Of a DNA stretch of 64,000 nucleotides, positions 1,280-62,284 are shown piece after piece. The DNA lies in IMG/VR virus record IMGVR_UViG_3300043411_000921, positions 177,400-241,399 of that record. One strand, written 5' to 3'. The position numbers were made by a program, and so were the translations under genes. The notes beneath the pieces were generated by a model. That model saw only the letters and a program-made list of their open reading frames with translations, was not told the DNA's origin and searched no databases. Positions within the stretch are counted from its first letter, which is position 1, and each line of letters opens with the position of its first letter.

Positions 1280-1626
1280 CAACAGACAACAACAACATCC
1301 CAGAAACAGAAAAAGCCTCATTTCTTACAGACGAATCAGAAAAAGAGGAAGGTGTCTCTTACGTCGTTCCAAACTACATTGAAACCAAACTCACAAAAGC
1401 GAGCAAACAAAAGTGCCGTGGCATTGTGAGAACCATCAATGATTTCGGAATCTCTCAGAGAGAGAAACTATTCCTCATCTATCTCTTGAGTTTGGAACTT
1501 GAACACCGAGATTCGATGTTGAAAATTTCCAAAACAATTGGAGAATGTCAAGCTTCGATTGAAGCACCCAAGGTTATTGTCTCTGAGGACCAGCCACAGC
1601 AGAAAAAACAAATCCTGCTTGGTTGA
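1276..1626 (+). CDS. hypothetical protein
   Basis: 116-aa ORF, ATGA overlap. Confidence 0.7.
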   Translation: MTTDNNNIPETEKASFLTDESEKEEGVSYVVPNYIETKLTKASKQKCRGIVRTINDFGISQREKLFLIYLLSLELEHRDSMLKISKTIGECQASIEAPKVIVSEDQPQQKKQILLG

Positions 1627-1885
1627 CACCAATCTTCTCTGCCACTTGTAAATCAATTCTCGTTATCACTTTCCCGTTCTCTTCAATGGTAACAAACCTA
1701 GTCGTTACCTTCTCTGGAAGAATCCCAGTTCCCCTCGAAACATAACAAACCTCAGTAGATGTTTGGATCATCAGAATGGCACCTATAACCTTCGCCCAAA
1801 CAGGGCCTATACGCCTTATCTGTGACAGCAAATCATTTCGATGGCTCGGAGGACGTTGGAGAAATTTGGAGCCCGTATAAGGCAT
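1574..1885 (-). CDS. possible small hypothetical protein (start uncertain)
   Basis: Fills the gap downstream of the endolysin on the same strand; overlaps repeat element copy 1. Confidence 0.3.
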   Translation of the reverse strand: MPYTGSKFLQRPPSHRNDLLSQIRRIGPVWAKVIGAILMIQTSTEVCYVSRGTGILPEKVTTRFVTIEENGKVITRIDLQVAEKIGVNQAGFVFSAVAGPQRQ

Positions 1886-1901
1886 CCTGGAGCGATTTAG
1901 G
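1797..1901 (+). repeat. ~105-bp bipartite dispersed element (family A), copy 1
   Basis: TATACGCCTTAT at 1808 and TCCTGGAGCGATTTAG at 1885 (offset 77). Confidence 0.85.
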
Positions 1902-2718
1902 GGATGGTGATAAGTGTGTCGATGGTTCTTGGGACAATCATCCCATGTTTCTTACCAGATTGCAGAAGAAGTTTTGTCGTTTGCGGTCCTGGAACACCAT
2001 CACATTCTTCTGGTTTCAAACCGAGTTTTAGTTGTTCGGCTTTCCAAAAGGCTTTGTCTTCGTTTTTGTCGAAGTTGAAAGGAAGGTATCCAGCAGCTTT
2101 GAGTGCTGCTGGAAGCCAAGGACCACAATCTCCTGGACCTCGGTTTGATGTTTGGTTGCTGTGATTGTAAACACCAACGACATCTCTTCCCTTTCCATCC
2201 CCAGAAATACGATTAACCAACCTCAGCATTGGTTTGTCTTTCTCGGTGTCCCAGGGAATTTGTCGTTGGATGCCAAGAATGGCAGTTAAGAAGTCAATGA
2301 ACAACACTGCCTTTTGGATTTGATCTTCATACAGATCGCCATTGTCATGCTGAACCATTTCTAGTCCACAAGTGTGGGCATTGACTGCTCCCGCTTGCCA
2401 AGTGAAGAATTCCAATGGATCATTCTGGATGATCCAGTCGCCGCTGAAATCTTCAGTAAAATCCCAACTCACTTGTCTTTCCGTATTGGTTTGATATCTT
2501 GCATATCTTAAGTCCAAGTCTGTGTTTGGCCCATAGCCGGGAAGAAGCTTTCCCAGTTTTCCATGAACAGTGTGGCAAACGATGGATCGAATCCATGTTT
2601 TCCTGGGACTTTTATCTGTGACTTGTTTGATTTTGAGGGCAGGAGCTTCTGGATCGAGCCAGGATGTTGTTTTCAACCCTGGAATTCCCAGCTTTCTGCC
2701 TTTGATGATGATGGACAT
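1897..2718 (-). CDS. endolysin: N-acetylmuramoyl-L-alanine amidase (Amidase_2-like) with C-terminal peptidoglycan-binding motif
   Basis: IVCHT, VSWDF, WQAG.VN..TCGLEM, VYNH..PGDCG motifs; C-terminal DGVPGPQT. Confidence 0.8.
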   Translation of the reverse strand: MSIIIKGRKLGIPGLKTTSWLDPEAPALKIKQVTDKSPRKTWIRSIVCHTVHGKLGKLLPGYGPNTDLDLRYARYQTNTERQVSWDFTEDFSGDWIIQNDPLEFFTWQAGAVNAHTCGLEMVQHDNGDLYEDQIQKAVLFIDFLTAILGIQRQIPWDTEKDKPMLRLVNRISGDGKGRDVVGVYNHSNQTSNRGPGDCGPWLPAALKAAGYLPFNFDKNEDKAFWKAEQLKLGLKPEECDGVPGPQTTKLLLQSGKKHGMIVPRTIDTLITIP

Positions 2719-2726
2719 AAAAGAGA

Positions 2727-2756
2727 ATGCCTCCGGCTGTAAATAGCCGGAGGCAT
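2727..2756 (-). promoter_or_regulatory. hairpin covering the endolysin RBS, with a late-promoter motif in its loop
   Basis: Perfect 12-bp stem ATGCCTCCGGCT/AGCCGGAGGCAT; minus-strand TATTTA at the loop; GGAGG in the 3' arm 11 nt before the ATG. Confidence 0.7.
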
Positions 2757-2787
2757 CTCAGGGGTTTAGAATTGGTGTTGTGTTGGA

Positions 2788-3255
2788 TCAGGTGCCGCTG
2801 ATAACAACGGAACCGGAAGCGCCAATGACGAGGAAATTCTTTCCGTCAGACATCAAAGCAACGGAAGGTCCGCCGCCAGTTGTTGCACCAGCCAAACCAC
2901 CAACAGGGAAGGTCAACTTGGAGCCTTTTGTTGCACTGGAGCCGGAAGCAAGAAGGGCAAACACTCTTGTTCCTTCTGCTTCTTGTGAACCTGTCAGAGC
3001 GTGTGCGTGGTTGCTGAGTGTCCTGATCGCAAAGATTGCACCGGGGCATTCATCAGCTTTCGGCATCACGAGTGTCAGAGCTGTTGAGCCGGACACAGTG
3101 ATGACACCAGCTTCGGCTGGTGTGAGTGTCACTGCGGAGGTTTTTGCTTTGATGTTTGGAAGCTTGTATGGAGAGAAACCGGAACTGCCTGCTTGAGCAG
3201 TGTCCAGATCTGTCACAACACCGTTGTCGCCAATTGTTGTTTTAGTTGCTGGCAT
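2788..3255 (-). CDS. putative virion structural/decoration protein
   Basis: Gly/Ser/Thr/Ala-rich beta-type composition; late motif TATTTA upstream. Confidence 0.5.
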   Translation of the reverse strand: MPATKTTIGDNGVVTDLDTAQAGSSGFSPYKLPNIKAKTSAVTLTPAEAGVITVSGSTALTLVMPKADECPGAIFAIRTLSNHAHALTGSQEAEGTRVFALLASGSSATKGSKLTFPVGGLAGATTGGGPSVALMSDGKNFLVIGASGSVVISGT

Positions 3256-3316
3256 GATCGTCTATATCCTTCTACCCAAGTGGGCTGGGAATAAATATAC
3301 AGGTTTTGCTGGAAAA

Positions 3317-3583
3317 TCAGTCTGCTGAGGAAGATGAGGGTTCGGTTGTGGTAGTGGTGGCCGAAGTGTTCTTTTGCACTTGATTCTCATTCCAGCGTCT
3401 ACCGAAGTAGAGAGCAAGAAGAGGAGTAAGAAACCCAGTGGCAATTGTCACATCAAACGCACGAATGTGTGGCGTAGAGAAGATGTTGAGAATGAACCAG
3501 AGAAGGGTTGCGGCAAAGGAAGTGTAAACCATTGTAAAGCTCAAACTGTCCTTTCCTTGGCTGTTTTTGAGAAGAAGTTTCAT
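3317..3583 (-). CDS. holin-like small membrane protein
   Basis: 88 aa, two hydrophobic helices, hydrophilic tail, lysis-cassette context. Confidence 0.55.
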   Translation of the reverse strand: MKLLLKNSQGKDSLSFTMVYTSFAATLLWFILNIFSTPHIRAFDVTIATGFLTPLLALYFGRRWNENQVQKNTSATTTTTEPSSSSAD

Positions 3584-3591
3584 GTAGTCTC

Positions 3592-4221
3592 CTACTGGCT
3601 AAGTACAATAGCAGCGGAAACACCAACACCCAACAAAACCCCAGCACCAACCAATCCAACATAAACCCAAGGAGACCTTTGTCCTGTTCTCTCCAAAGCT
3701 TGGATTGTCCTCTCTGCACTCGTAAGTTCAATATCCCTTGAACGAACCTGGGCTTGATAAAAAGCTCTCATCAGCCTCATGTCCGAATTTAGAATGGAAA
3801 CGTCTCTGATTGCTGTGGTAGCAAGAGTAGCAATCGCAAGCCTGTGGTTTGCATCTATTGTCCTTGTGATTTCCCCCAGAGAAACAGTCAGGTGATTGAT
3901 GGCCGGTTCGTTCAAACAGATTCCATTCCAAGGACCATAAACTGTTTGGTCGGCTGGAGAGGTTTGTGGATTCCTGAGCATTGGGATAGCAAACGCTCCA
4001 GCATCCCTAGCCCTCTCTTCGTTGAAGATTTCTCTCAATGAAACAGAAGAGCCTGATTCTACTGAAGAATCGAGGATTTGTTGATAAGGTGTGAGATCAA
4101 CACTCGAATCTTCTTGAAGAAAAGAAGAGTCCGGGGAAGGCGTTGATATGACTGGAGTTGTTGAAACTGTGGAGGAGCAGCCGAGGGAGAGGAGGATTAG
4201 GATGGATGCGATTCGCTTCAT
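3592..4221 (-). CDS. lipoprotein with C-terminal TM helix (unimolecular-spanin-like architecture)
   Basis: Lipobox ILLSLG-C15; coiled coil; C-terminal WVYVGLVGAGVLLGVGVSAAIVL. Confidence 0.6.
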   Translation of the reverse strand: MKRIASILILLSLGCSSTVSTTPVISTPSPDSSFLQEDSSVDLTPYQQILDSSVESGSSVSLREIFNEERARDAGAFAIPMLRNPQTSPADQTVYGPWNGICLNEPAINHLTVSLGEITRTIDANHRLAIATLATTAIRDVSILNSDMRLMRAFYQAQVRSRDIELTSAERTIQALERTGQRSPWVYVGLVGAGVLLGVGVSAAIVLSQ

Positions 4222-4226
4222 GCGAA

Positions 4227-4655
4227 TCAGTTTTGTGGCTTGAAGAGAGGAATGCCGAAAACTTCATTGATGGTTTCAGCCATCTTCTCAGGATTGTCGT
4301 GGTGTTTCTCGACCAAAGCACGAATTTCTTTGCTTCGCAGAGAGGCAATCTCTTTCAAGGTTGCATCGTGTTGTTCACTGATCTGACGAACAATGTTAGC
4401 GTGCTCCCTTTCAATGTTTTGTCTTCGCTGGATTTCCTGTTCAACTTGTTGCTGAAGGACTTCCAAGTTTTTCTTGTGAGCTTCTCTTGTTTCTTTTTGC
4501 TGTTTGACAAGCGATTCAACAATATCATTGCGTTGTTTGACAAGAAGGATCGTGTAAACAAGAGCAGCACCAAGAAGAATCTCTGTTCCATAAAGTTTGA
4601 GAAATGACCAAACCTTCATGATGAAGGTTTTTGTTTTCAATAGGATTAATTCCAT
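4227..4655 (-). CDS. i-spanin-like protein (N-terminal TM plus coiled coil)
   Basis: ILLGAALVYTILLV followed by a long heptad region; directly upstream of the lipoprotein. Confidence 0.55.
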   Translation of the reverse strand: MELILLKTKTFIMKVWSFLKLYGTEILLGAALVYTILLVKQRNDIVESLVKQQKETREAHKKNLEVLQQQVEQEIQRRQNIEREHANIVRQISEQHDATLKEIASLRSKEIRALVEKHHDNPEKMAETINEVFGIPLFKPQN

Positions 4656-5032
4656 TTTTTACTTTCTTCGCTAAATGGAGTTGGGTTGATGTCAGCATCT
4701 GGATAATCACCATCAGCTTCATCGTCGATCAGACCAGACATCTCTTCCCCGAAAAAGTATTGAAGTTCTTGAATGGAAGTTGAGAGATCGTTCATCTGCC
4801 CAAGGATTTCTTCAAGGAGTTTCTTGTTTGCCATTTGTTGTTTGTTGGTGATAGTCACCATGCGTTCTAGGACTTTCAGTCTATCCAACAACACCTTGTT
4901 TTCAAACTCCCTCATTCTCTCCAGAAGCTCGGCTGCATTGATTGTGGTTGAATCAACAATCAGTTCATCGGCTTGTTCGTCTGGGGAAGGTGGTGGGGGA
5001 AGAATGACTTCGGTTCTTGGTTTTCTTGACAT
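4646..5032 (-). CDS. hypothetical coiled-coil protein
   Basis: 128-aa ORF in a minus-strand operon. Confidence 0.65.
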   Translation of the reverse strand: MSRKPRTEVILPPPPSPDEQADELIVDSTTINAAELLERMREFENKVLLDRLKVLERMVTITNKQQMANKKLLEEILGQMNDLSTSIQELQYFFGEEMSGLIDDEADGDYPDADINPTPFSEESKKWN

Positions 5033-5036
5033 GACA

Positions 5037-5333
5037 CTACTCCTTTGTTCTTGTTTTCAGGGGATCATCAGCTTCCATAGCTGCGTACAACGAAGCTGGA
5101 GTGCTGAACACATACGTTCTCTTCACATTGGCTATCTTATTCTTCTTCGCCTCCTCTATGACTGCTAGAATTTTCGGATCGTTCCTCTCCAACATCTCCA
5201 GCACCTGTGAAAACATTTCCTGAATGTTCAGTCCGTTCTTGTAAAGTAAACGTTTACAAGCAACGAAGCTCTCAATGGGAAGACCCACTTTCACGGATTG
5301 AAACACACGGCTGGAGAAGTTACGAATTTCCAT
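5037..5333 (-). CDS. hypothetical protein
   Basis: 98-aa ORF, tight operon spacing. Confidence 0.65.
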   Translation of the reverse strand: MEIRNFSSRVFQSVKVGLPIESFVACKRLLYKNGLNIQEMFSQVLEMLERNDPKILAVIEEAKKNKIANVKRTYVFSTPASLYAAMEADDPLKTRTKE

Positions 5334-5335
5334 TG

Positions 5336-6106
5336 TTAGCTCGTTGAGGATGATCCTACGCTACCACCACCAGAAGGAACACCGCCACCATTATCTGGAC
5401 CAGAGTTGCCAGCCCTTGGAGCAGCAGGATAATCACCTTCAACCTGCTTCTTCGTCTTGGCTGTAAGATCAAAGTCACGCTCCAAAATATTCACCATCTC
5501 TTTAGCAAGTCTTGGCGAGTAGTTCTTTGAAATGTAAAACATTGCTCGATTTAGAATCAAGGATTTTGGATCAATGAGTGTTTGATAGTTGTTCACAAGC
5601 CTAGCAACGCCTTCAGCAAACTTCCTGATGTTGATTTTTGGAACGGGAACAACTTCTGGGGGATTGCTTTCAGTGTCGTCTCCTCCATCGTCACCGCCAC
5701 CAAACGGATCATCTCCACCACCCATGTCCATATCACCAGCATCATCGACAGGTGGTTCTGGTGGAGCTTCTTGCTCAAACAAGAACTTTCCCATCGAGAA
5801 CAAACGTTTTCCTTTTTTCCTTTCGGTCAATGGGGGTGTTTGAATGTTGTCTTTGACTTGTGCAGGATCAACAGGAAGTGCCCCATCCGTTTCCGGCATA
5901 TCCAGAGGGACTGACTCTCTTTCAAACTGCATGAGATACTTGTCAATCTTCTGATCAACAGAAGCTTCTGTCTCTGACAAGGAATCAGAAACACTGGGAA
6001 GCTGAAGAATCTGTTCTGGGCTGGAGACATAGGGCTTTCCATCTCCACCACCCTCTTCCTGTTCTCTCAACAAGAACTCGCTGAAACGTTTCTTTCTCAT
6101 AATCAA
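5336..6106 (-). CDS. acidic low-complexity protein, putative internal head protein
   Basis: FLLREQ and FLFEQ protease-site-like motifs; Gly/Asp/Pro tracts. Confidence 0.6.
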   Translation of the reverse strand: MIMRKKRFSEFLLREQEEGGGDGKPYVSSPEQILQLPSVSDSLSETEASVDQKIDKYLMQFERESVPLDMPETDGALPVDPAQVKDNIQTPPLTERKKGKRLFSMGKFLFEQEAPPEPPVDDAGDMDMGGGDDPFGGGDDGGDDTESNPPEVVPVPKINIRKFAEGVARLVNNYQTLIDPKSLILNRAMFYISKNYSPRLAKEMVNILERDFDLTAKTKKQVEGDYPAAPRAGNSGPDNGGGVPSGGGSVGSSSTS

Positions 6107-6918
6107 AGGATCCTTCCACCAAGAACTTCAACTGGAGGAGATGATTGTGGCAATCCAACGCTCGTCTCCTTCTCATTTGAAACAACAGCTTGGACAGAGT
6201 AAAGCTGGTGGAGCTTCGCCATCTCAGCAATCAACATTCTCATTTCAACAACATTCCAATTGATTTCTCGCATGGAGCGATTGAGATATTCAAGCTTCTC
6301 TCCTGGGAAATCAAGGAACCAAGCGTGGTGCCATGTGTCAAGAACCAGCACTGGAATTGCCATCAATGGAAGATGAAGGGTATGACCTTCAACAAAAGTG
6401 TTGAAATAACGTTGTTTGAACGGATCGAAGTAACAAACAGCCCAACCTTCTCTGGACGCCATTCCGCAAGCTCTGAAATCCAATTGCCACTGGTCGAAGG
6501 TTCCCCAATCCCTTGAAAGACGCATAAAAGGAATGCTGTCAGCACGAATCTCGGAGTTCAAATCTCCCGTGTTGGTGAACAACAACTCGTGGAACTTCAC
6601 TCCGTTCATGTTGTGAGTCTCATCAATCTTCAACCTTCTGAACTCTGAATCGTTTGGGTTATCTGCATCTGTCTTTGGAACAGAATCCAGCTTCGCAGAA
6701 ATTTTGTTGTGACTTGTGACGTAGCTGTTATACAGCTTTTCGTGGTTTTCCTTTGTTGTGGGGGATGAAACATCGCCCTTCAAAATAAATGAACGAGGCA
6801 TCAACACAGCCGCTTCTGAAACAACAGCTTTTGCCGCTTGTGCTACCTTTCCATCCAAAACTGTTCCAACAGCTTCTCGAATGATCTTCTGGAGATCTTT
6901 TGCATTGAGGGTCGTCAT
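6103..6918 (-). CDS. Fe/Mn superoxide dismutase-like protein (ChrC/SodF-like) with N-terminal leader
   Basis: H(EKLY..YV), HELLF, WGTFDQW, GWAV, PVLVLDTWHHAW, INWNVVE. Confidence 0.85.
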   Translation of the reverse strand: MTTLNAKDLQKIIREAVGTVLDGKVAQAAKAVVSEAAVLMPRSFILKGDVSSPTTKENHEKLYNSYVTSHNKISAKLDSVPKTDADNPNDSEFRRLKIDETHNMNGVKFHELLFTNTGDLNSEIRADSIPFMRLSRDWGTFDQWQLDFRACGMASREGWAVCYFDPFKQRYFNTFVEGHTLHLPLMAIPVLVLDTWHHAWFLDFPGEKLEYLNRSMREINWNVVEMRMLIAEMAKLHQLYSVQAVVSNEKETSVGLPQSSPPVEVLGGRIL

Positions 6919-7953: not shown

Positions 7954-7958
7954 CGAAA

Positions 7959-7964
7959 TAACTA
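7959..7964 (-). promoter_or_regulatory. late promoter motif TAGTTA, probably leaderless
   Basis: 5 nt before the ATG at 7953. Confidence 0.6.
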
Positions 7965-7998
7965 GAATCCCTCAAATACCCACGCCACACTCGTTCCC

Positions 7999-15986: not shown

Positions 15987-18900
15987 TTAGCCGCCCACGA
16001 AGTTGTCGCGGTTGGTAACAACGAAGTCGATAGCAAAGAACTCAAGACTTGTTGTAGGAATCAAGAAGATCTTGCCCTTCATTGTCTTGTTGTCGAGGTC
16101 AGCCTGGGTTGTGGTTGTTGTGTCGATAGCAACCTTGTATCTCTCGACACCACCAGCAGCTTGATATCTCGCCAGGATTGGTTGAACAGCAGCGTTGAAA
16201 GCAGCCAAGGTTGACTCTCTCGCTGGTTCAAACAAGAATCTTGTTGCGACTTGACGAACTTCCCTTCTAATCGTAATCAACAAACGACGAACGTTGACTC
16301 GGTTGAGCAAACTGTCCTTGTTGAGCAAAGTCTTTTGTCCCCAAACCACTGGGCCGACTCCTTGCTTGGACAAGAGAAGGTTCAGCCTTGCCACATAAAG
16401 GGCATCTGCGTTGGCTTGATTGAGTGCAACAGCAAAGTCTGTGACGTTGCTGAGAGTGCCCCTTGTAAAGCCAGCAGGAGCGTTAAATGGCTGTCCAACC
16501 GTATCGTTCTTGGCATAAACACCAAGCACTGCAACAGAAGGTGGAACCTTTTCAACAACTGTTCCATTGGGCAGAGCGATGTTTGTGTCTGGGAAGTAAG
16601 CTGCTGCAAAGGAGCTATTCACACCTCTGGAGACAAATGCTTGCGCGGTTTGAGACACATTCACAGATTCATAGCTTCCAGTGATAGAAATTCCGTTCAC
16701 ATCATATTGTTCTGGATCCATGATGTAGAAGCAGTCAAATCTATCTTGTTCCATTGCATTGACAACCGTGTCTGTGACGTAGCGAACACGGATACCAGGA
16801 ACAGTCAGAAGCTGGATGCTGACTTCGTTCACGTCAGAAACAATGTCGGTTGCTTTCAGGTAGCTTTGAACCGTTGGACCGTTTACCAGACCACGATCAG
16901 TCCTTGCAATTTCTTGAGCAACAGCGGCATTCTTGAGATAACGTGTGTCTTGGTTGAAGATCCTCACACCATCGAATCCTCTTTCAAGGTAGAAGGAGAA
17001 CTTGGCAAGAGATTGAACTGCGGCATTTTGGTTCAAGTCACTGACACGCAACGCCCTTGTTTTTGTTGTCTCGTCTGCTGAGATGTTTCCACCGCGAACA
17101 TAACTCCAGGACAAAAGAGAGGTGATAGAGGTGTCTGGACGATCTCCGCTTCCTGTAACAACCTTCACCTTCTCCAGAGAGAAAAGGTTCTTGTTGAAAA
17201 CGTCACAATCCAGAATGCCATTATCCACGGTTGAAGCTTCTCCTGTGTTGGCATAAACCGCAGGTTGCATGTTGGTTGCATCGCTGAAGCTTGGGAAGTA
17301 TTTGCTGTAACCAACGAGGCCAGAGTTAAACTGAGTGCTTCCGTTCGGATCAGTGAGACTTGTCACATTTTGAAACTGAACACCCCAGAAAAGAAATGTG
17401 TCAACACCAGAACTTGCATTGGACTTTTTCAAGTTCAACCGCATTGGAATTGGTGGTTGGGAGGCACTAAAAAGTGGAACCAAACCGATAGAAGATGTTG
17501 CGAAGTATGGATAACCAGGATCCAACAAATCTCCGTGGCCAAGGTTGTAAAGGCTGCTGCTTCCTTGTGTGACAAGGTGTTGTGGACCTCTAAAACCAAA
17601 TGGGATGGAAGAAGGATCCGCTTCACCTGAATCGACTGCATCAGACACTTCAACGCGAACGAACCTGGAGTTGACTGGATAATCCCCAGTTGTCACAACC
17701 TTCTGGGAATCGAGGTCTGTGTCGAAGTTAAAGAATGTGTGTTGCGTACCAATGATCTTGGCGATGTACCTTGGGTTGGTTGGATCCAATGAGAGATTTG
17801 TGTATGTCTCCAGAGCGCCTTCAGAATCCAAAGAGTTCATTCTCTTCACGAGAACGGTAAAGGTTCCGTAAGGCTGTGTAGAGTTTCCAGGTTGAATGTT
17901 GGTGATAGAGATTTTCACATCACCGTTTCCAGCTTCACCATCAGAAAGGTGATGAAACCTGAAAAGGTTAATTGGGTTTCCACCGAATCCTTGGGAAATA
18001 ACCCAAGGGGACAGAGCGGTGCTATAACGGTCAGCAAAGCCCTCAAAATTTGGAGTGATGGTAGACCCTACATTGGATGTATGCGTGGCGTTAGAACCCG
18101 ATCCTGGAACCAGGAATGCCACGTTTTCAACCGTTCCATAAGCCGAACCGGACTCGGGATGAATAATCCCAGAACCCGTTGGAACAGCCAAAGCAGAAAA
18201 TACATCAAAGTGAGCATAGAGCAAGTGCCCTGCCTGATCTGTTTTCAGAGGATCTGTGTTCAGAACACTGGGGAAGTAGTTGATGGCTTGTGGGTCAAAG
18301 CTGGCTGTGATGACGTTTGGATAGCGTGTGTCTGTCCCCTTGTGTCCATTCAGCAGCAAAACAAAGTTCTGTTGTCCGTTTGCAAGTTGGATCGAACCGG
18401 AGAAACCTCCATTGAAAGTTGACTCGGTTGCAACCAAACCGGATCCGGGTGCTGGGGAAGGTTGAGCAGCAGAGGACAAACGAAGAACAACGCCGGATGG
18501 GGCAAAAAGGACGCCACGAACAATTGGGGCTGCATTTGTTGAATTTTGCAGACCTGCATCAGAGAGAAATGTACTTCCAGCAGACTCGGACATAAAGGCA
18601 CCGAGCATGTAAACGCTTCCAGTGACTCCACCATAGTTCGCATAGATGTTGGCACCGATTGCTCCATCTGAACCACTGATTTGTTCAGCACCAACAACAA
18701 ACCCAGCTCTTGCCACGGTTCCATCGGCAGCACGGGCAGTACCATCTCCAGCACCGAGCACCCTGACCTGGATCATTGGAACAGAAGTATTTCCAAACCA
18801 TTCTCTCGCAGAGAGATACCCAAGAGGAGTGTTTGCGTTCATCCCACCGAAAACAGAAACATAATCGGAAAGGGTTGTTGTCAGAACGGGAACGAAGGCT

Positions 18901-19013
18901 GGTCCTTTTGTGGTTGGGGAAATTACGCAAGCAGGCACGCCGCTTGGTGTTCGGGTTGTTGGTTGACTAATGTCGAATTCTCTAGCTGAAACACCTGGGC
19001 TCAAAAGTGCCAT
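15987..19013 (-). CDS. tail sheath protein 2 (gp18-like)
   Basis: LSPGVSAREFD, KGPAFVP, APAGFTRG, WGQKTL, RVNVRRL, FLFEP. Confidence 0.92.
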   Translation of the reverse strand: MALLSPGVSAREFDISQPTTRTPSGVPACVISPTTKGPAFVPVLTTTLSDYVSVFGGMNANTPLGYLSAREWFGNTSVPMIQVRVLGAGDGTARAADGTVARAGFVVGAEQISGSDGAIGANIYANYGGVTGSVYMLGAFMSESAGSTFLSDAGLQNSTNAAPIVRGVLFAPSGVVLRLSSAAQPSPAPGSGLVATESTFNGGFSGSIQLANGQQNFVLLLNGHKGTDTRYPNVITASFDPQAINYFPSVLNTDPLKTDQAGHLLYAHFDVFSALAVPTGSGIIHPESGSAYGTVENVAFLVPGSGSNATHTSNVGSTITPNFEGFADRYSTALSPWVISQGFGGNPINLFRFHHLSDGEAGNGDVKISITNIQPGNSTQPYGTFTVLVKRMNSLDSEGALETYTNLSLDPTNPRYIAKIIGTQHTFFNFDTDLDSQKVVTTGDYPVNSRFVRVEVSDAVDSGEADPSSIPFGFRGPQHLVTQGSSSLYNLGHGDLLDPGYPYFATSSIGLVPLFSASQPPIPMRLNLKKSNASSGVDTFLFWGVQFQNVTSLTDPNGSTQFNSGLVGYSKYFPSFSDATNMQPAVYANTGEASTVDNGILDCDVFNKNLFSLEKVKVVTGSGDRPDTSITSLLSWSYVRGGNISADETTKTRALRVSDLNQNAAVQSLAKFSFYLERGFDGVRIFNQDTRYLKNAAVAQEIARTDRGLVNGPTVQSYLKATDIVSDVNEVSIQLLTVPGIRVRYVTDTVVNAMEQDRFDCFYIMDPEQYDVNGISITGSYESVNVSQTAQAFVSRGVNSSFAAAYFPDTNIALPNGTVVEKVPPSVAVLGVYAKNDTVGQPFNAPAGFTRGTLSNVTDFAVALNQANADALYVARLNLLLSKQGVGPVVWGQKTLLNKDSLLNRVNVRRLLITIRREVRQVATRFLFEPARESTLAAFNAAVQPILARYQAAGGVERYKVAIDTTTTTQADLDNKTMKGKIFLIPTTSLEFFAIDFVVTNRDNFVGG

Positions 19014-19051
19014 GTTGTTTATCTCCGTTTCGGTTGCTGATTAAATAGAAC

Positions 19052-19081
19052 AACCCAGGAAAACGACTGCTTTCCTGGGTT
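19052..19081 (-). terminator. hairpin between the sheath genes
   Basis: AACCCAGGAAA-N8-TTTCCTGGGTT; late motif TATTTA at 19042-19047 just downstream on the minus strand. Confidence 0.55.
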
Positions 19082-19120
19082 GCTGAGATGGTTTTGAACT
19101 ATGGTTCTAGTGTGTTTGGA

Positions 19121-22100
19121 CTATCCCAGAGTCACTCCCGAAGGAAGAAGCACAAAGTCCATTGTGATGTATTCTACTGCTCTCGTTGGAAGAACCCTGA
19201 TTTGAGCATTCATTCTGTTGCTGTTCACGTCGTCTGCGGTGTTGTTTCTTCCATCACAGATAACAGCGAATTGCTCGATGCCCTGTTGGAGTTGGATGGC
19301 AGAGAGAACCAAGCTGGCTTCGCTGACGAAACGTTGGCGAAGGGCTGGAGTGTTTTGTTCAAACAACATCCTGTTGGCGATCTGAACCACTTGACGCTTC
19401 AACTCAAGAATCATTCTCTTGACGTTGATGCTCTCCAGAGCACTCGTTGCTTGTTGCAGAGTGTTCTGAGAGAAGAAGACGTAGTTTGCGCCAGGGAATT
19501 TGACGATTGGGTTGATATTAGCATCAAACAGGGTGTTTCTATCTCCTTGATTGACTCTGACCGAAGTCAAGACAACGAAGGAAAGGGAGCCACGATCAAA
19601 TCCTGCTGGGGCGAACCAGGGGAATTTCACTCTGTCGTTGTAGCTCAAAGCGGCAACCGCAGCGATGCTTGCTGGGACTGTGACTCTGCGACGGTTCACT
19701 GAGTCATCCATCACAATGTTGGGGAAGTAAGCACCAGCGGCATTGTTGTCCAAAGCCCTTGTGATAAAGGCGTTTGCTGTGTTCTTGATAGAAGCGTGTC
19801 TTGTTGTTTCGCCATCAAAGATACGCAGGCTGTTTTGGTCGTATGGTTGAATATCCATTGGGTAGAAGGAAAGGCCATAAGCCAAGTTCTTTTCAAGGGC
19901 ATAGTTCGTGACCAACGGATCTCTTTGTCCTGGGATTGCCAAGATGTTGTTGTTGGCGATGTTCGGGTTGGTTGCAATGTCGATTGCGGTTCTGTATGCA
20001 ACCACACAACTGTTCGCTGTCGAAACCCCAGTATAGTTTCTTCCAGACACAACGGGGACCGTGCTAAAAAGTGCTCCTGGGCTAATGTAGTTGCTGTTGG
20101 CCACCCCATAGGTTCCCGCCAAGCCAACCTCTGTTGAGGTGGACCTGTCGGTAAATCTGGTTGCTTGTTTGTCGAAGATGTTGACACCATCCCAGCCACC
20201 TTGCATAAAGGTTGTGAACTTGGTGTATGGAGAGTAGTTGTTGAACACAACAGCACTCCCACTGTTCAGCAGAGAGGCAAAGGTCAAGCGGTCGCTGAAG
20301 TTCGTTGCTGCGTAGGTGTTTGAATCAATTGCTGCGTTGCGGAGATAAGCAGCCTCTCTCAGTAGCGTTGCGGGAGATCCAGTCGTCACATCGGTCATGC
20401 TTGTTACATTCAATGCAACCTTCGCAAGAGAGAATTTGTTGTTGTTCAACAGATCGGATTGAGAACCCGTTGTCAAAACTCCCTGTTTTTCAATTCCAGC
20501 AAACTTTGTATAGGAAGCGATCACTGGGTTGATTTCTGTGTTCGTGTTAACGTTCAAAACGTCGTTATTATTTCTTTCGAATTTGACACCCCAAAACAAT
20601 CTTCCATCAAACACGGTTTGAGATGATGGAGCACCGAACTCGGTACCTGAAGCTGTTAGTTGGTTTCTGGTCATCGTGAATCTAAAAGGGACAGGGGGAA
20701 CGATAGAACCAGAAAGCAATGCCCCTCCAGGAACCAAACTGGAGGAAACACCGGAAATCATTGAACGACTGCGAGAGACATTGTTGATTGCATCGGTGAG
20801 AGAAACGTTTGTCAGAGGCATTTGATGCCCGCGGAAACCAAATGGAAGAGCTTTTGCAGGAACTTCTCCAGCATCCAGTTGTGAGCTTGGGATGACACGA
20901 ATAAGGCGGCTACGATTCCCATACTTTCCTTCAACAACCAACCCCCTGTCGTCAGAATCAACCGCATCAAAGTTGAACTTGGTGCGTTTGTCTCCAATCA
21001 CCTTGATAATGTAATTGTCGCTGTTTGGATCCAAACTGAGGTTGCTGAACTGTTCAAGAATCTGTGGATCTGTGTCGGAATCATTGAAAGCACGAACCAT
21101 CAAAGAGAAGGTTCCATAGTTTGTTGATGGGTTTGTTGAAGCCAGCAAGTTTGCAATGCTGATCTTGTATTTGTCATTGGCATAAGCACCATCATCCCTA
21201 CTCTCAACCTGAAACAAATCATATTCAACATTGCCGAATGGTTGAGAAATGAAGAATGGAGTTTTCGGTGCTGTGTACCTTGTGTTAAACAGGCCAAAGG
21301 CTTCGCCAAAAGTGGTTCCAAATTGATTTGTGTATTGAGAGCCTGAGAGGAGAGCAACCGTTGCAGTTGAGTTGCTTGCTGACAAAGCAGCGACTTCGTT
21401 ATCAACGGCATAGTCCAAATACAGCAAGTGTTTCTTGGAATCGAAGTCGAGAGGGTTTGTGTTCAGGATCTTTCCAACATACTTCTCGCTGTTTGGATCA
21501 AGAGAAGCTGAGTAAATTCTCAACCCAGCAAAGCCATCATCAGAACCAAACGTGTTTCCAGCAGAGGAAGAAAGAACAAGCTTAAACAGCCCATTCATCA
21601 AGCCTTCTGTTCCGACTTGAGCAGCTTCCCCAGTGCCAAGACCGCTTGCGTAGGCAGAAGGATTGTAAACACCATTGGAATCAGAAGCACCACTCAAAAC
21701 CATAAACCTGGAATCAGGAGTTGTGAAAAGTGTTGCTCTGACAAGGTTTACTGTTTCACTAATTCCGGGAGTCAACCCCAAAACAGAATAACTGTCGTTG
21801 TTTGTGAACATCGGGAAACCAAAAGACTCGTTGGTTTGAACGTGGTGATTGGCAACAAGAAATTGAACACGACCTTGCAAAGCGCCAGATACAAATGTTG
21901 CCCCAGCACCAACCACTTTTGTTCCGGCGTTGACAACCGTTCCCTGTGTTTCAGTCAATGAAATGTCAACAGAACTACTATTTGCTCCGCAGCCCAAAAC
22001 GCGAACATAGTTTGCCGATGCAACTTCAGATCCTTTTCCTTCGAAGAACTTTTGAACGGCAAAGGTTGCTGGGTATTTTGCATCAACGGTACCGAACTTG

Positions 22101-22264
22101 TTTTCAAAGTCCAAGTAACTGCCGACGCTAATGGGGACGAATGCTGGGCCTTTTTCGGCAGGGCCAATAATTGTGGCTGGGGTGCCTCCAACGGGGGTTG
22201 TCCTCTCTGTAAGGTCGAACTCCCGGTCGAAGTAGTTTGGAGCCTTGAATACTGTTTCTGGCAT
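19121..22264 (-). CDS. tail sheath protein 1 (gp18-like)
   Basis: KGPAFVP, PWFAPAGFDRG, NINPIV, INVKRM, LFEQN. Confidence 0.92.
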   Translation of the reverse strand: MPETVFKAPNYFDREFDLTERTTPVGGTPATIIGPAEKGPAFVPISVGSYLDFENKFGTVDAKYPATFAVQKFFEGKGSEVASANYVRVLGCGANSSSVDISLTETQGTVVNAGTKVVGAGATFVSGALQGRVQFLVANHHVQTNESFGFPMFTNNDSYSVLGLTPGISETVNLVRATLFTTPDSRFMVLSGASDSNGVYNPSAYASGLGTGEAAQVGTEGLMNGLFKLVLSSSAGNTFGSDDGFAGLRIYSASLDPNSEKYVGKILNTNPLDFDSKKHLLYLDYAVDNEVAALSASNSTATVALLSGSQYTNQFGTTFGEAFGLFNTRYTAPKTPFFISQPFGNVEYDLFQVESRDDGAYANDKYKISIANLLASTNPSTNYGTFSLMVRAFNDSDTDPQILEQFSNLSLDPNSDNYIIKVIGDKRTKFNFDAVDSDDRGLVVEGKYGNRSRLIRVIPSSQLDAGEVPAKALPFGFRGHQMPLTNVSLTDAINNVSRSRSMISGVSSSLVPGGALLSGSIVPPVPFRFTMTRNQLTASGTEFGAPSSQTVFDGRLFWGVKFERNNNDVLNVNTNTEINPVIASYTKFAGIEKQGVLTTGSQSDLLNNNKFSLAKVALNVTSMTDVTTGSPATLLREAAYLRNAAIDSNTYAATNFSDRLTFASLLNSGSAVVFNNYSPYTKFTTFMQGGWDGVNIFDKQATRFTDRSTSTEVGLAGTYGVANSNYISPGALFSTVPVVSGRNYTGVSTANSCVVAYRTAIDIATNPNIANNNILAIPGQRDPLVTNYALEKNLAYGLSFYPMDIQPYDQNSLRIFDGETTRHASIKNTANAFITRALDNNAAGAYFPNIVMDDSVNRRRVTVPASIAAVAALSYNDRVKFPWFAPAGFDRGSLSFVVLTSVRVNQGDRNTLFDANINPIVKFPGANYVFFSQNTLQQATSALESINVKRMILELKRQVVQIANRMLFEQNTPALRQRFVSEASLVLSAIQLQQGIEQFAVICDGRNNTADDVNSNRMNAQIRVLPTRAVEYITMDFVLLPSGVTLG

Positions 22265-25906: not shown

Positions 25907-25927
25907 GCCTTGTAACTAGAAAACAAG

Positions 25928-25960
25928 AAAGGGATGGAGTCCAGCCGACTCCATCCCTTT
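25928..25960. terminator. bidirectional-type intrinsic terminator
   Basis: AAAGGGATGGAGTC-CAGCC-GACTCCATCCCTTT. Confidence 0.7.
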
Positions 25961-25984
25961 CAGGGGTTTTGATTGTTGTAAGAC

Positions 25985-27657: not shown

Positions 27658-27695
27658 ACAAGGGGAAGGGCTGAAAATTCAGCCCTTCCCCTTGT
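27658..27695 (-). terminator. strong hairpin after the major capsid gene
   Basis: ACAAGGGGAAGGGCTGAA-AA-TTCAGCCCTTCCCCTTGT. Confidence 0.75.
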
Positions 27696-27738: not shown

Positions 27739-29706
27739 TTATAGGATTGACATGTCGAGAACTGTGACCGTTGCGTAGAAGTCGGAGCGAACCATCTTCT
27801 TTCCGTAACGGGTCATGATTCCCTTACGAGGAGTGAAGTCCTCTTGACCGTAGATCACAGGGGTCAGGATAAGAGGAACGTAAGGAGCGTAGATGTATCC
27901 AGACTCCAGGAAGGTTGAACCCTTGAGGCCCAGAAGAATCTTGTTCACTGGGAAGTAAGGGTCAATGAAGACCGAGTAACGACCGTTCACTGTTCCTGTG
28001 GCTTCTGCACCGATGCTCATGTTGTCACGAACTTGTCCATCGCTGTCGATTTTGTAGTTCGCACGGTAAGCAACTGTTGCTTCGAGGATTGTGCCGACTT
28101 CTGGAGAGCACACGATGAAGTTGCCAGATCCGCGAAGAGTCTTCTTGTGGATGACGTTTGCAGCGTCGGTGATGGTTCCGATAAGTGTCTCGTACCATTC
28201 ACGGGATGTTCCAGCGAATTGTGGACCTGGGTAAACAGTGCTTGTGCGAGCAACTTCTGTTCCGGTTTGCTTGTTAACAAAGCGGCCTGGAGCGCGGCTC
28301 CAGAAGTAGTTGGCAGCAGTTGCCTGAGTCAACAGGTCGTTCAAGATTTCACGGTCAATATCCAGAGTGATCATTTCACTGAGGATGTTTGTGAGTTCTG
28401 CTTCCACGTCGAGGGAGTAGAACGCTGTGAGGTCTTGAGCCATTTCTGGGGACCAACGAGCGCGCAGCTTCCTTGTGGTTGCAGTCACAGAAACGCTGTC
28501 AATCTTGATGTCAACGTCTGGGATCCTTGGGCTTGCATCAACCGCGAAGTTAGATTCGAAGCTTGGGATTGTCAGAGCGGAACCATCGGAGTTGACGGAG
28601 AGTTGGTCAGCAATTGGGCAAGAAGCTGTGATTGCGGAGAGACCACCACCGAGACCTGCGTTTGGAGTTGCACCCACTGGAGGTGTTCCACCTTGAGGCA
28701 GAGCCATCGCAAACATCAAGTGCGTTCCGTTAAATGGATCAGGAACGAAGGTAGAAGCTGTGCCGTTATCTGTCCAGTTACCACGCTTTGTAAAGCGGCG
28801 GAAGTTCAAAACTCCTTCACCTTGTTGGTAGGTTTGTGGAACGGAAGTGAAGTTGGAGCTAGAAGCACCCAAACCAACCACTGCGATTTGCTCAACGGAG
28901 TTGAGGTCGGCACCGTTAACGGCTGTTGTGAGAGCAGAAGCGGAAACCACCATGAAGGTGAAGTCCAGAGCGTTCACATCAACGTCTGTGGAGAGGGTAG
29001 GATCGTAGTCAACGAAACGTGCGTTGTAACCAACAAAGCCTGCGGAAGCGGACACGGAAGAACCGGAGAGCCAGGAAGTACCGCCGCTCCATGAACCCAG
29101 GATGACTTCATCTTGAGCAAGAACGCCACGAACGTGAACCTTGGAATAACCGGAACCAATCAGGTTATATTGACCACCAGCAGCAAGCGAACCGCTTGTG
29201 CGGATTGTGGAACCAGATGGGTTGGTGTAGATTGATTGGCCACGACCGTATGTCGCTGCGCCGGGATCAGAACCCACTGCAAATTGGTTTGCGCTTGCAC
29301 CGGCATCACCACCGACATAGGAGCCGTAGGTGTAGTCCAGATAGAAGAGCAGACCAGAAGGAAGGCTCATTGGCTGGACGGAGACAATTTCATTTGCAAC
29401 GAGGCCAGCAAACACTCTACGAACGATTGGGAATGCCACGTTCGTGAAACCAGCAACCTGACCAGAAGAGGCAAGGCCAGCTCCACCTGTGGACAGGGAG
29501 AGGCTTTCGTTCAACATTGAGCTTCCGCCCTTGAGAACTTCGACTGCTTGGTTTTCAAGCAGTCTTGCCATCTTTTGACGACCTGCAACGGACAGACCTT
29601 CGAGAAGACCTGTTTTGTTCCATTTGTTGACGATTCTTTCGTCTGCGGTGTTGGCTGTCCTTTGGATACCTTCTGCCAACTGTGAAAGTGTCAGATTTCT
29701 TGACAT
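27739..29706 (-). CDS. major capsid protein (T4 gp23-like) with large insertion
   Basis: KW.KTGLLEGL, LLENQ, PIVRRVF, VQPMSLPSGLLFYLD, TRKLRARWSPEMAQDL, YAPYVPL, FTPRKGIMTRY. Confidence 0.96.
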   Translation of the reverse strand: MSRNLTLSQLAEGIQRTANTADERIVNKWNKTGLLEGLSVAGRQKMARLLENQAVEVLKGGSSMLNESLSLSTGGAGLASSGQVAGFTNVAFPIVRRVFAGLVANEIVSVQPMSLPSGLLFYLDYTYGSYVGGDAGASANQFAVGSDPGAATYGRGQSIYTNPSGSTIRTSGSLAAGGQYNLIGSGYSKVHVRGVLAQDEVILGSWSGGTSWLSGSSVSASAGFVGYNARFVDYDPTLSTDVDVNALDFTFMVVSASALTTAVNGADLNSVEQIAVVGLGASSSNFTSVPQTYQQGEGVLNFRRFTKRGNWTDNGTASTFVPDPFNGTHLMFAMALPQGGTPPVGATPNAGLGGGLSAITASCPIADQLSVNSDGSALTIPSFESNFAVDASPRIPDVDIKIDSVSVTATTRKLRARWSPEMAQDLTAFYSLDVEAELTNILSEMITLDIDREILNDLLTQATAANYFWSRAPGRFVNKQTGTEVARTSTVYPGPQFAGTSREWYETLIGTITDAANVIHKKTLRGSGNFIVCSPEVGTILEATVAYRANYKIDSDGQVRDNMSIGAEATGTVNGRYSVFIDPYFPVNKILLGLKGSTFLESGYIYAPYVPLILTPVIYGQEDFTPRKGIMTRYGKKMVRSDFYATVTVLDMSIL

Positions 29707-51017: not shown

Positions 51018-51039
51018 AGCCGTTTGCCTATTTACAGGC

Positions 51040-61044: not shown

Positions 61045-61129
61045 GGAAGAGTATCCTAATGGTAAGGAAACGGTTTGCTAAACCGTCGAGGGCTAACCCC
61101 TCTTGCGAGTTCGACTCTCGTCTCTTCCT
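61045..61129 (+). tRNA. tRNA-Ser(GCT)
   Basis: ACGGT-TTGCTAA-ACCGT, long variable arm, TTCGA. Confidence 0.9.
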
Positions 61130-61279
61130 CCGATGTTTTGTGTGTGGCTGTAAAATGGAACAGTTTCGCAACCCAACTGTAATGTGGGGTGTTGAAAATG
61201 TGGGCAGGAATAATAACTAAACCAACCCACCACACGAAATATCTCTCTGTCCCGGTATGCCGCCTCGTGTTTCTACATT

Positions 61280-61353
61280 CTCTCCATCGTCTAACTGGAT
61301 AAGGCTCTTGCCTTCTAAGCAAGTAATTGGGGGTTCGAATCCCTCTGGGGAGG
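61280..61353 (+). tRNA. tRNA-Arg(TCT)
   Basis: CTTGC-CTTCTAA-GCAAG; TTCGAAT. Confidence 0.9.
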
Positions 61354-61396
61354 CTAGCAACAAAGTTCTTGACAAGGAAAAAGTGACAGGGTAAAA

Positions 61397-61483
61397 GAGA
61401 AAGTGTCCCGAGTGGAAAGGGAGCAGCCTGCAAAGCTGAAGAGGATAAAATCCTCACCAAGAGTTCGATTCTCTTCTTTCTCT
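61397..61483 (+). tRNA. tRNA-Cys(GCA) with a long variable arm
   Basis: GCAGC-CTGCAAA-GCTGA; variable stem GAGGAT/ATCCTC; U73. Confidence 0.8.
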
Positions 61484-61488
61484 CTGAC

Positions 61489-61562: not shown

Positions 61563-61564
61563 AC

Positions 61565-61635: not shown

Positions 61636-61675
61636 TCGTTTCTTCTGAATTTGCTTCATACATAAGCCTTACAAC

Positions 61676-62283: not shown

Positions 62284-62284
62284 C

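What the first reader, a model, noticed from the sequence alone, without database searches (positions are those of the whole stretch)
2716..2756. Endolysin translational lock: RBS hidden in a hairpin with a late promoter in the loop
Seen: a perfect 12-bp stem whose 3' arm contains the GGAGG RBS of the amidase, with the late motif TATTTA at the loop. A read-through transcript would fold and hide the RBS, or terminate at the following U-rich tract. A transcript starting from the loop promoter would lack the 5' arm. Established: T4 lysozyme gene e is controlled this way. Here the same logic is applied to an unrelated amidase and a different promoter consensus.
Basis: partly seen in the sequence, partly recalled or inferred. 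Interest (0 to 1): 0.6.

Follow-up and report, generated by a model that had tools for sequence, protein, structure and literature searches.

The report
Terminator hairpin hiding endolysin ribosome site
In an uncultured freshwater/wastewater huge phage, one 30-base hairpin upstream of the endolysin gene looks like a transcription terminator, carries a promoter-like motif at its tip and buries the gene's ribosome-binding site, a conserved variant of the phage T4 lysozyme "translational lock".

Summary
On the minus strand, 2756-2727 forms a perfect 12-bp stem with a 6-nt loop. TATTTA sits at the tip, GGAGG lies in the descending arm, and a T-rich tract runs into the ATG at 2718. The gene it precedes is a genuine Amidase_2 enzyme.

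TA[C/G/T]TTA is a real signal in this 241-kb T4-like phage record. Of 65 copies, 75% lie 45 nt or less upstream of an ORF start in the sense direction, against 19% for random positions. Genes preceded by it include the capsid, sheath and terminase genes.

Amidase homologues were fetched without regard to the hairpin. Twenty-one of 42 distinct upstream regions keep the same design: the stem is held by compensatory changes, the motif is invariant at the tip, and the ribosome site stays in the 3' arm. Some relatives have no T-tract. Others use a different hairpin that hides the AUG itself.

Predicted cost of opening the ribosome site is 16.4 kcal/mol in read-through RNA and 2.8 kcal/mol in RNA started at the tip.

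Best reading: a nested terminator, promoter and translational lock that makes amidase expression depend on its own promoter. No transcript start, transcript end or translation data exist. An early-versus-late role is not shown, because the upstream genes carry the same motif. This is a new variant of a known kind.

The parts
2745..2756 (-). 5' arm of the hairpin (ATGCCTCCGGCT); contains the anti-SD CCTCC
   Evidence: the arm covaries with the 3' arm in relatives
2740..2745 (-). TATTTA, a copy of the promoter-like motif TA[C/G/T]TTA, at the tip of the hairpin
   Evidence: 49 of 65 copies lie 45 nt or less upstream of ORF starts in sense orientation; no -35; kept at the tip in 20 of 21 aligned relatives
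2739..2744 (-). 6-nt loop ATTTAC
2727..2738 (-). 3' arm of the hairpin (AGCCGGAGGCAT)
2730..2734 (-). GGAGG Shine-Dalgarno of the amidase gene. G2734 is the 6th base after the motif, the start predicted if the geometry is as in T4 late promoters
   Evidence: (A)GGAG(G) is invariant in the 3' arm of 21 relatives; opening cost 16.4 vs 2.8 kcal/mol; the TSS position is inferred, not measured
2719..2726 (-). T-rich tract TCTCTTTT directly after the stem (terminator tail and SD-AUG spacer)
   Evidence: a T-rich tail is present in most relatives but absent in L023, L024 and L036
1897..2718 (-). Amidase_2-type N-acetylmuramoyl-L-alanine amidase, 273 aa, putative endolysin
2788..3255 (-). Upstream co-directional gene (155 aa, unknown function, phage-only family); its transcript would end at or read into the hairpin. 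Stop codon TGA at 2790-2788
   Evidence: syntenic in L003, L008, L011, L015 and L018
3292..3297 (-). TATTTA copy 36 nt upstream of the 155-aa gene, so the likely source of read-through RNA carries the same motif
3317..3583 (-). 88-aa protein with two hydrophobic segments (holin-like), with TACTTA 16 nt upstream at 3605-3600
   Evidence: holin role inferred from sequence only

Best explanation
The 30-nt hairpin is a nested stop-restart-and-lock element between two co-directional genes of a lysis-like cassette.

(a) RNA arriving from the 155-aa gene upstream folds the GC-rich stem. Most of it ends at the T-rich tract just before the amidase AUG, as at an intrinsic terminator.

(b) RNA that reads through keeps the amidase Shine-Dalgarno paired with the CCTCC of the 5' arm and is poorly translated.

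(c) RNA polymerase using the -10-like TATTTA at the tip starts about 6 nt downstream, near G2734. That RNA lacks the 5' arm. It neither terminates nor hides its ribosome site, so it is the translated amidase mRNA.

The net effect is that amidase output depends only on its own promoter and is insulated from upstream transcription.

Shown here: the structure, its conservation with covariation, the motif's genome-wide link to gene starts, the enzyme's identity, and the computed energies. Inferred: that the motif is a promoter, where the start lies, that termination occurs, and that translation differs between the two RNAs.
For: Structure and statistics.

Motif: 65 copies, 75% lying 45 nt or less upstream of an ATG-ORF in the sense direction, versus 19% for random positions and 25% for the antisense orientation. 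There is no -35 element. A is enriched at the 6th base after the motif. Copies precede the MCP, both sheath genes, TerL and an adaptor-like gene.

Relatives, retrieved through the amidase protein and so blind to the hairpin: 21 of 42 distinct upstream regions have the motif inside a hairpin that raises the opening cost of the translation start by 10-19 kcal/mol.

Alignment A2: 89% of cells paired versus 36-57% when partners are slid. Seven of 13 pairs carry double changes. Covariation is 0.276 versus 0.148, reached by 0 of 500 shuffles.

In the core stem, non-Watson-Crick cells are G-U (16) rather than A-C (2, both alignment shifts). This points to pairing in the sense RNA.

The motif varies only at its degenerate position (TATTTA in the window, TAGTTA in L008 at 85% identity), while the rest of the loop varies freely.

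L023, L024 and L036 keep the hairpin, motif and SD without a T-tract. L017, L010 and L041 place TAYTTA 5 nt before the ATG inside a stem that pairs the AUG itself.

Where the upstream gene is divergent (L012, L013) there is no hairpin.

Two other genes of the same record have a motif-containing hairpin that hides the AUG (0 of 100 shuffles each).

The other strong terminators in the window are followed by the motif in tandem, so terminator plus restart is this phage's habit.

T4 precedent: PMC3014915.
Against: There is no 5'-end, 3'-end or translation measurement. The four RNA runs hold only sparse short contigs.

If termination is efficient, the lock has little left to act on and could be a by-product of packing a terminator against a start codon.

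The upstream genes carry the same motif (3297, 3605), so there is no evident temporal contrast as in T4.

A start at G2734 would put the SD at the very 5' end of the mRNA, which may or may not bind ribosomes well.

L034 keeps the hairpin, SD and T-tract but has TATCTA at the tip, so either the motif tolerates this change or that amidase is expressed another way.

The gp55-like sigma candidate is weak (E 1e-4 to 1.6e-3). The record is only about 66% complete and the host is unknown.

Relatives are phylogenetically related, and the 21 aligned sequences were those that have the hairpin.
Confidence: 0.6

Rival explanations
1. It is simply the intrinsic terminator of the 155-aa gene. The SD lies in the stem and TATTTA in the loop only because the intergenic space is short. 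The amidase is made from whatever RNA escapes termination or from a promoter elsewhere.
For: It is the top terminator-like site, with a GC-rich stem followed by 6 T in 8. It sits 28-32 nt after a stop codon. This phage puts similar hairpins after the capsid and sheath genes. No hairpin is present where the upstream gene is divergent.
Against: A terminator loop is free to drift, yet the motif is kept at the tip in 20 of 21 relatives while the other loop bases vary. L023, L024 and L036 keep the hairpin without a T-tract. L017 and L010 have a non-terminator hairpin (its 3' arm runs into the coding sequence) that again joins the motif with the start codon. Read-through RNA would have its SD locked at 16.4 kcal/mol, so some unlocked RNA is needed to make the enzyme.
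Confidence: 0.22
2. It is a purely temporal lock exactly as in T4 gene e. Early or middle transcripts run through the lysis region and must not yield endolysin; only late transcripts from the tip promoter are translated. Termination is irrelevant.
For: The T4 e, soc, 49 and I-TevI precedent (PMC3014915). The phage is T4-like in capsid, portal and terminase. Relatives exist without a T-tract.
Against: Every recognisable promoter-like site upstream on this strand up to the divergence point at 7954-7998 is of the same TA[C/G/T]TTA kind (3297, 3605, 6962, 7964). Sigma-70-like matches are no more frequent than in shuffles. The amidase has no signal or SAR-like N-terminus, so early synthesis would not obviously be harmful (sequence).
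Confidence: 0.1
3. The inverted repeat acts at the DNA level, either as an operator for a dimeric regulator overlapping the promoter or as an extruded hairpin promoter like those of phage N4 virion RNA polymerase.
For: A perfect 12-bp inverted repeat with a 6-bp spacer centred on a promoter-like motif. A few other motif copies have short flanking palindromes.
Against: Stems of 6 bp or more flank only 3 of 65 motif copies, versus 1.4% of random positions, which is not significant. Half-site sequences are not conserved but covary. Mismatches are G-U on the sense strand (16) rather than A-C (2), as expected for RNA and not DNA.
Confidence: 0.05

Closest known systems
Phage T4 gene e (lysozyme) translational lock; also T4 soc, 49 and I-TevI (McPheeters et al. 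1986, as reviewed in PMC3014915)
   Same: In long transcripts a hairpin sequesters the ribosome-binding site of a lysis enzyme gene. A -10-only late-type promoter lies in the DNA that encodes the 5' strand, so its own transcripts cannot form the hairpin and are translated. The design is conserved among relatives. The phage here is T4-like in its capsid, portal and terminase.
   Different: The enzyme is unrelated (Amidase_2, not a T4-lysozyme-type muramidase). The promoter word is different (TA[C/G/T]TTA; TATAAATA has 0 copies in the record). Here the hairpin is followed by a T-tract and sits after a stop codon, so it also looks like a terminator. The upstream transcripts appear to be of the same promoter class, so the contrast may be one of dosage or insulation rather than early versus late. 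Nothing has been measured.
Rho-independent (intrinsic) terminators of bacteria and phages
   Same: A GC-rich 12-15 bp stem, a short loop, a T-rich tail, and a position about 30 nt after a stop codon. Other such sites follow the capsid and sheath genes in this window.
   Different: It carries a conserved promoter-like word at its tip and the next gene's SD in its descending arm. Some relatives have lost the T-tract but kept everything else.
Tandem terminator-promoter junctions between phage late genes (seen in this window at 19084-19042, 25961-25913 and 27695-27629)
   Same: The same two signals (hairpin with T-tail, then TA[C/G/T]TTA) reset transcription between co-directional genes.
   Different: At those sites the promoter word follows the T-tail and the next gene's start region is not paired. 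At the amidase the promoter is nested inside the hairpin, which creates the lock.

Membership tests
T4 gene e-type translational lock | A stable RNA helix sequesters the SD and/or AUG in transcripts that start upstream | tested here: met
   12-bp perfect stem with GGAGG in the 3' arm. Opening the SD costs 16.4 kcal/mol in read-through RNA. Covariation in 21 relatives. Computed, not probed.
T4 gene e-type translational lock | A promoter lies within or after the DNA for the 5' strand, so that its transcripts lack that strand | tested here: inconclusive
   TATTTA at the tip belongs to a motif with strong positional and orientation bias toward gene starts and is conserved at the tip. No TSS data exist.
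T4 gene e-type translational lock | Upstream transcripts of an earlier temporal class read into the gene | tested here: inconclusive
   The upstream promoter-like sites on this strand are of the same motif class. There is no expression time course.
T4 gene e-type translational lock | Measured difference in translation between long and short transcripts | not testable with these tools
   Needs reporter fusions or toeprinting.
Intrinsic (Rho-independent) terminator | GC-rich stem-loop immediately followed by a U-rich tract, downstream of a co-directional gene | tested here: met
   13 pairs (8 GC), loop of 6, tail with 6 T in 8. Top hit of the scan. Stop codon at 2790-2788. The T-tract is absent in L023, L024 and L036.
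Intrinsic (Rho-independent) terminator | RNA 3' ends at the U-tract | not testable with these tools
   Only assembled RNA contigs were available, and they cannot show ends.
Amidase_2 (PF01510) peptidoglycan amidase / endolysin | PGRP/AmpD/T7-lysozyme fold | tested here: met
   AlphaFold model with pLDDT 96.2. Foldseek hits to AmpD, XlyA, LysC, PlyL, AmiA and PGRPs at probability 1.00. PF01510 is recorded on many homologues. Profile hit to XlyA, E 1.4e-4. The window protein itself misses Pfam's threshold.
Amidase_2 (PF01510) peptidoglycan amidase / endolysin | Conserved zinc-binding and catalytic residues | tested here: met
   H49, E120, H186 and D197 are invariant in 44 homologues down to 31% identity. 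Assigning them to the His-His-Asp zinc site and the catalytic Glu is by analogy with AmpD, from my own knowledge.
Amidase_2 (PF01510) peptidoglycan amidase / endolysin | Acts as the phage's lysis enzyme | not testable with these tools
   Context only. Upstream on the same strand lie a two-TM holin-like gene, a lipoprotein gene with a lipobox, and a TM-plus-coiled-coil gene with a weak Rz-like hit.
T4-type late promoter (gp55-dependent) | Consensus TATAAATA | tested here: not met
   TATAAATA has 0 copies in the record. The word found is TA[C/G/T]TTA(C/T).
T4-type late promoter (gp55-dependent) | A -10-only element, no -35, upstream of virion genes | tested here: met
   No information content upstream of the motif. 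Copies precede the MCP, sheath, TerL and adaptor-like genes.
T4-type late promoter (gp55-dependent) | Phage encodes a gp55-like sigma factor | tested here: inconclusive
   A 264-aa ORF at G000:C1:86203-86997 hits phrog_234 at E 1e-4 and 1.6e-3 only. No gp45 C-terminal domain and no phage RNA polymerase were found in the 66%-complete record.
N4-type hairpin promoter | The promoter word is generally presented in a short DNA hairpin | tested here: not met
   Only 3 of 65 motif copies have flanking stems of 6 bp or more.

The most novel reading that the evidence does not exclude
A clade of uncultured freshwater and wastewater huge T4-like phages uses a previously undescribed -10-only promoter word, TA[C/G/T]TTA. 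It is often placed 5-6 nt before the ATG, which would give leaderless late mRNAs. The clade has repeatedly nested this word inside RNA hairpins that hide the downstream translation start. At the endolysin the hairpin is also the upstream gene's terminator, so one 30-nt element would stop transcription, restart it and license translation.
Probability: 0.45. Interest if true: 0.6.

Novelty: new variant of a known kind. Interest (0 to 1): 0.5.

Why it matters
If confirmed, the T4 gene e strategy would not be a peculiarity of T-even coliphages. It would be a recurring solution for lysis genes in very distant, uncultivated huge phages, rebuilt with another enzyme, another promoter word and several different hairpin designs.

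It also gives a practical annotation key for this clade: a promoter word, probable leaderless starts, and terminator-promoter junctions.

Finally, it offers a compact natural part that combines terminator, promoter and ribosome-site gating in 30 nt, which can be tested directly with reporters.

Tried and rejected
- blastn of 1500-5500 against the phage collection found nothing. tblastn of the amidase found one unannotated 485-kb uncultured phage.
- Rfam has no family at the site.
- RNA evidence: four metatranscriptome runs hold only sparse 150-350-nt contigs. One (2734-2884) crosses the 5' arm and loop, but contigs cannot show ends or strand, and such libraries may contain DNA. I treat this as uninformative.
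- The idea that the motif is generally presented in DNA hairpins (N4-like) was rejected.
- A DNA operator reading was rejected on G-U versus A-C counts.
- The holin-like gene's weaker hairpin around TACTTA (3605) is not beyond shuffles: 13 of 100 reach it.
- A PHROG scan of ten large motif-preceded genes outside the window gave no functions, so it could not support or weaken the 'late' label.
- A search with the 155-aa upstream protein found one non-syntenic relative only. Its function stays unknown.
- T4 gp55 protein, phrog_12791, RNA polymerase families and the gp45 C-terminal domain gave nothing in the incomplete record. DNA_pol_B was also absent.
- Literature searches for this promoter word, or for such an element in huge phages, found nothing relevant.

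Full report
WHAT IS THERE. The window is bases 177400-241399 of a 241,399-base IMG/VR virus record judged about 66% complete. It carries a T4-type major capsid protein (27739-29706, PF07068, E 1e-75), a T4-type portal, a large terminase, two tandem tail-sheath paralogues of about 1000 aa, and 22 tRNA genes. Near-identical DNA occurs in freshwater and wastewater metagenomes from 11 studies.

The finding lies on the minus strand, between a 155-aa gene (2788-3255) and a 273-aa gene (1897-2718). Read 5' to 3' on that strand, the elements run as follows:
- stop codon TGA at 2790-2788;
- about 30 nt of spacer;
- 5' arm ATGCCTCCGGCT (2756-2745);
- loop ATTTAC (2744-2739);
- 3' arm AGCCGGAGGCAT (2738-2727);
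- TCTCTTTT (2726-2719);
- ATG (2718-2716).

GGAGG occupies 2734-2730 inside the 3' arm. TATTTA occupies 2745-2740 at the tip.

IS IT MORE THAN CHANCE. The 111-nt context folds at -31.6 kcal/mol, against -19.4 +/- 2.8 for shuffles (z = -4.4, 0 of 200 as good). The site is the best terminator-like match in the first 20 kb. The whole record has five perfect hairpins with stems of 12 bp or more, where I estimate about 0.09 by chance. Three of the other four lie in the window: between the two sheath genes (19051-19082), after the capsid gene (27658-27695), and just upstream of the 24647-25906 gene (25927-25961). All three have T-rich tails on the minus strand.

THE GENE. Pfam does not reach threshold on the window protein, and PHROGs gives only a weak amidase hit. 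However:
- 113 homologues were found, many with PF01510 on record and one with PF01471.
- A five-sequence profile hits the XlyA amidase (E 1.4e-4).
- H49, E120, H186 and D197 are invariant in 44 homologues.
- An AlphaFold model (pLDDT 96.2) matches AmpD, XlyA, LysC, PlyL, AmiA and PGRPs.
- The start codon at 2718 is conserved across the family.

Upstream on the same strand lie a two-TM 88-aa protein (3317-3583), a lipoprotein with a lipobox (3592-4221), and a TM-plus-coiled-coil protein with a weak Rz-like hit (4227-4655). A lysis cassette is therefore a reasonable inference, but it is not shown.

THE MOTIF. TA[C/G/T]TTA occurs 65 times on both strands; TAATTA never occurs. Forty-nine copies (75%) lie 45 nt or less upstream of an ATG that opens an ORF of 50 aa or more, in the sense direction. 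The figure is 19% for random positions and 25% for the reverse orientation.

There is no conserved element upstream of the motif. C or T is preferred just after it. A is enriched at the sixth base after it. Distances from the motif to the ATG cluster at:
- 5-6 nt (11 sites);
- 10-14 nt (16 sites);
- 16-45 nt (often with an AGGAG-like word).

In T4, the late promoter TATAAATA ends 5 nt before the start site (established knowledge). With that geometry the 5-nt class would give leaderless mRNAs, and the amidase transcript would start at G2734, the first G of GGAGG.

The motif precedes the capsid gene, both sheath genes, the terminase and an adaptor-like gene, which supports a late-type role. That label stays an inference, for two reasons. 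A DnaB-like helicase gene also has a copy 70 nt upstream. And the only sigma candidate is a weak gp55-like hit. No phage RNA polymerase was found in the incomplete record.

COMPARATIVE TEST. Amidase homologues were fetched by protein similarity from IMG/VR, from assemblies behind the protein database and from metagenome contigs. This is blind to the upstream DNA and gave 42 distinct upstream regions.

Twenty-seven have the motif within 50 nt of the start. In 21 of them it sits inside a hairpin that raises the cost of opening the translation start by 10-19 kcal/mol compared with an RNA begun 6 nt after the motif. Four designs appear:
- Design A (window, L021, L008, L009, L025-L028, L031, L032, L042, L011, L015, L037, L038): CCTCC-containing 5' arm, motif at the tip, (A)GGAG(G) in the 3' arm, T-rich tail, then ATG.
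- Design A' (L033, L018): the motif itself pairs with AACTA.
- Design B (L023, L024, L036): the same hairpin but no T-rich tail, plus an outer helix that also pairs the AUG.
- Design C (L017, L010, L041): TAYTTA 5 nt before the ATG, inside a 6-9-bp stem whose 3' arm is the start codon and the second codon. This cannot be a terminator.

In an alignment of 21 sequences of designs A, A' and B plus L034:
- 89% of cells are paired, versus 36-57% when partners are slid.
- Seven of 13 pairs carry changes on both sides.
- The covariation score is 0.276 versus 0.148 in shuffles, reached by 0 of 500.
- In the eight core pairs, the non-Watson-Crick cells are 16 G-U against 2 A-C (both alignment shifts), as expected for pairing in the sense RNA.

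The motif is kept in 20 of 21. It differs only at its degenerate position between the window (TATTTA) and its 85%-identical relative L008 (TAGTTA), while the remaining loop bases vary.

Where the upstream gene is divergent (L012, L013) there is neither hairpin nor motif. L034 is an exception: it has the hairpin, SD and T-tail but TATCTA at the tip.

Two caveats apply. The aligned set was chosen because it has the hairpin. And the sequences are related, so cells are not independent events.

ENERGETICS. In RNA that starts upstream, keeping GGAGG unpaired costs 16.4 kcal/mol. In RNA starting at 2736, 2734 or 2732 it costs 3.9, 2.8 or 2.3.

Over all 49 motif-to-gene sites of the record, the amidase ranks second for this difference and first for absolute cost. 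The first-ranked site (G000:C1 about 171100-171140, an 800-aa gene) and the third (about 87420-87470, a 591-aa gene) are further hairpins that contain the motif and hide the AUG. For each of the three sites, 0 of 100 upstream shuffles reach the observed value.

INTERPRETATION. Elsewhere in the window, strong terminators are followed in tandem by the motif (19084-19042, 25961-25913, 27695-27629). At the amidase the two signals are nested, which puts the next gene's SD into the terminator stem.

The simplest account of all the observations is a stop-restart-lock element:
- upstream RNA mostly ends at the T-tract;
- what reads through is translationally silent;
- RNA begun at the tip cannot form the stem, so it neither terminates nor hides its SD.

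This works like the T4 e, soc, 49 and I-TevI hairpins (PMC3014915, section 29). I do not claim the T4 temporal logic, because the upstream genes carry the same motif (3297, 3605, 6962, 7964). Insulation of endolysin dosage from an upstream, possibly abundant, transcript is the more economical purpose.

A pure-terminator reading explains the window alone. It does not explain the conserved motif at the tip, the T-tract-less relatives, or design C.

WHAT IS NOT KNOWN. The following are all unmeasured: transcript starts and ends, termination efficiency, translation, the polymerase or sigma that reads the motif, timing, and the host. The only RNA data available were sparse assembled contigs, which cannot speak to any of these.

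VERDICT. The element is best described as a new variant of a known kind of control. Confidence in the composite mechanism is 0.6.

Noticed in passing
whole record G000:C1 (window included): Extreme avoidance of six-base palindromes. Twenty of 64 are absent and 29 have one copy or fewer (for example CTGCAG 0 vs 37 expected, CCATGG 0 vs 39). Of only 22 hexamers absent from the + strand, 20 are palindromes. This looks like restriction-site avoidance.
   Followed up: partly
window-wide; e.g. 51029-51042 (+), 25918-25904 (-), 7964-7951 (-), 13599-13586 (-), 53982-53968 (-): Eleven copies of TA[C/G/T]TTA lie exactly 5-6 nt before an ATG, and 16 lie 10-14 nt before one with no Shine-Dalgarno. This suggests leaderless or very short-leader late mRNAs, terminase included.
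   Followed up: partly
G000:C1 about 171100-171140 (minus; outside the window) and about 87420-87470 (plus): Two more hairpins hold the motif in the 5' arm and the start codon in the 3' arm: a 12-bp stem before an 800-aa gene and nested helices before a 591-aa gene. Both are beyond shuffles, with 0 of 100 reaching the observed value.
   Followed up: partly
19084-19042, 25961-25913, 27695-27629 (minus strand): Strong hairpins of 12-17 bp with T-rich tails are each followed at once by a TA[C/G/T]TTA copy and the next gene. These look like tandem terminator-promoter junctions among the head and tail genes: between the sheath paralogues, after the capsid gene, and before the 24647-25906 gene.
   Followed up: partly
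G000:C1:86203-86997 (+), locus L077:1366-2160: A 264-aa ORF whose only family hit is the T4 gp55 late sigma family (phrog_234, E 1e-4 and 1.6e-3). It is a candidate reader of the motif, next to a glycosyltransferase gene.
   Followed up: partly
6103-6918 (-): A 271-aa phage protein with an iron/manganese superoxide dismutase C-terminal domain (PF02777, E 1e-14), preceded by TATTTA 38 nt upstream.
   Followed up: no
15987-19013 and 19121-22264 (-): Two adjacent tail-sheath paralogues of about 1000 aa. The sheath domains are only in the C-terminal third; the N-terminal 650-700 residues are unassigned.
   Followed up: no
61045-63962 (+): An array of 22 tRNA genes in 3 kb at the end of the window.
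   Followed up: no
52696-53970 (-) and G000:C1:53493-54944 (-): Two pentapeptide-repeat-type proteins, both preceded by the motif.
   Followed up: no
L004:2950-3003 and L050:850-903: In a more distant amidase lineage (56-58% identity) a 10-bp hairpin ends exactly at the ATG, with no TA[C/G/T]TTA and no T-tract. AGTAAAC lies upstream, and related words are also enriched before genes in the window's genome.
   Followed up: no
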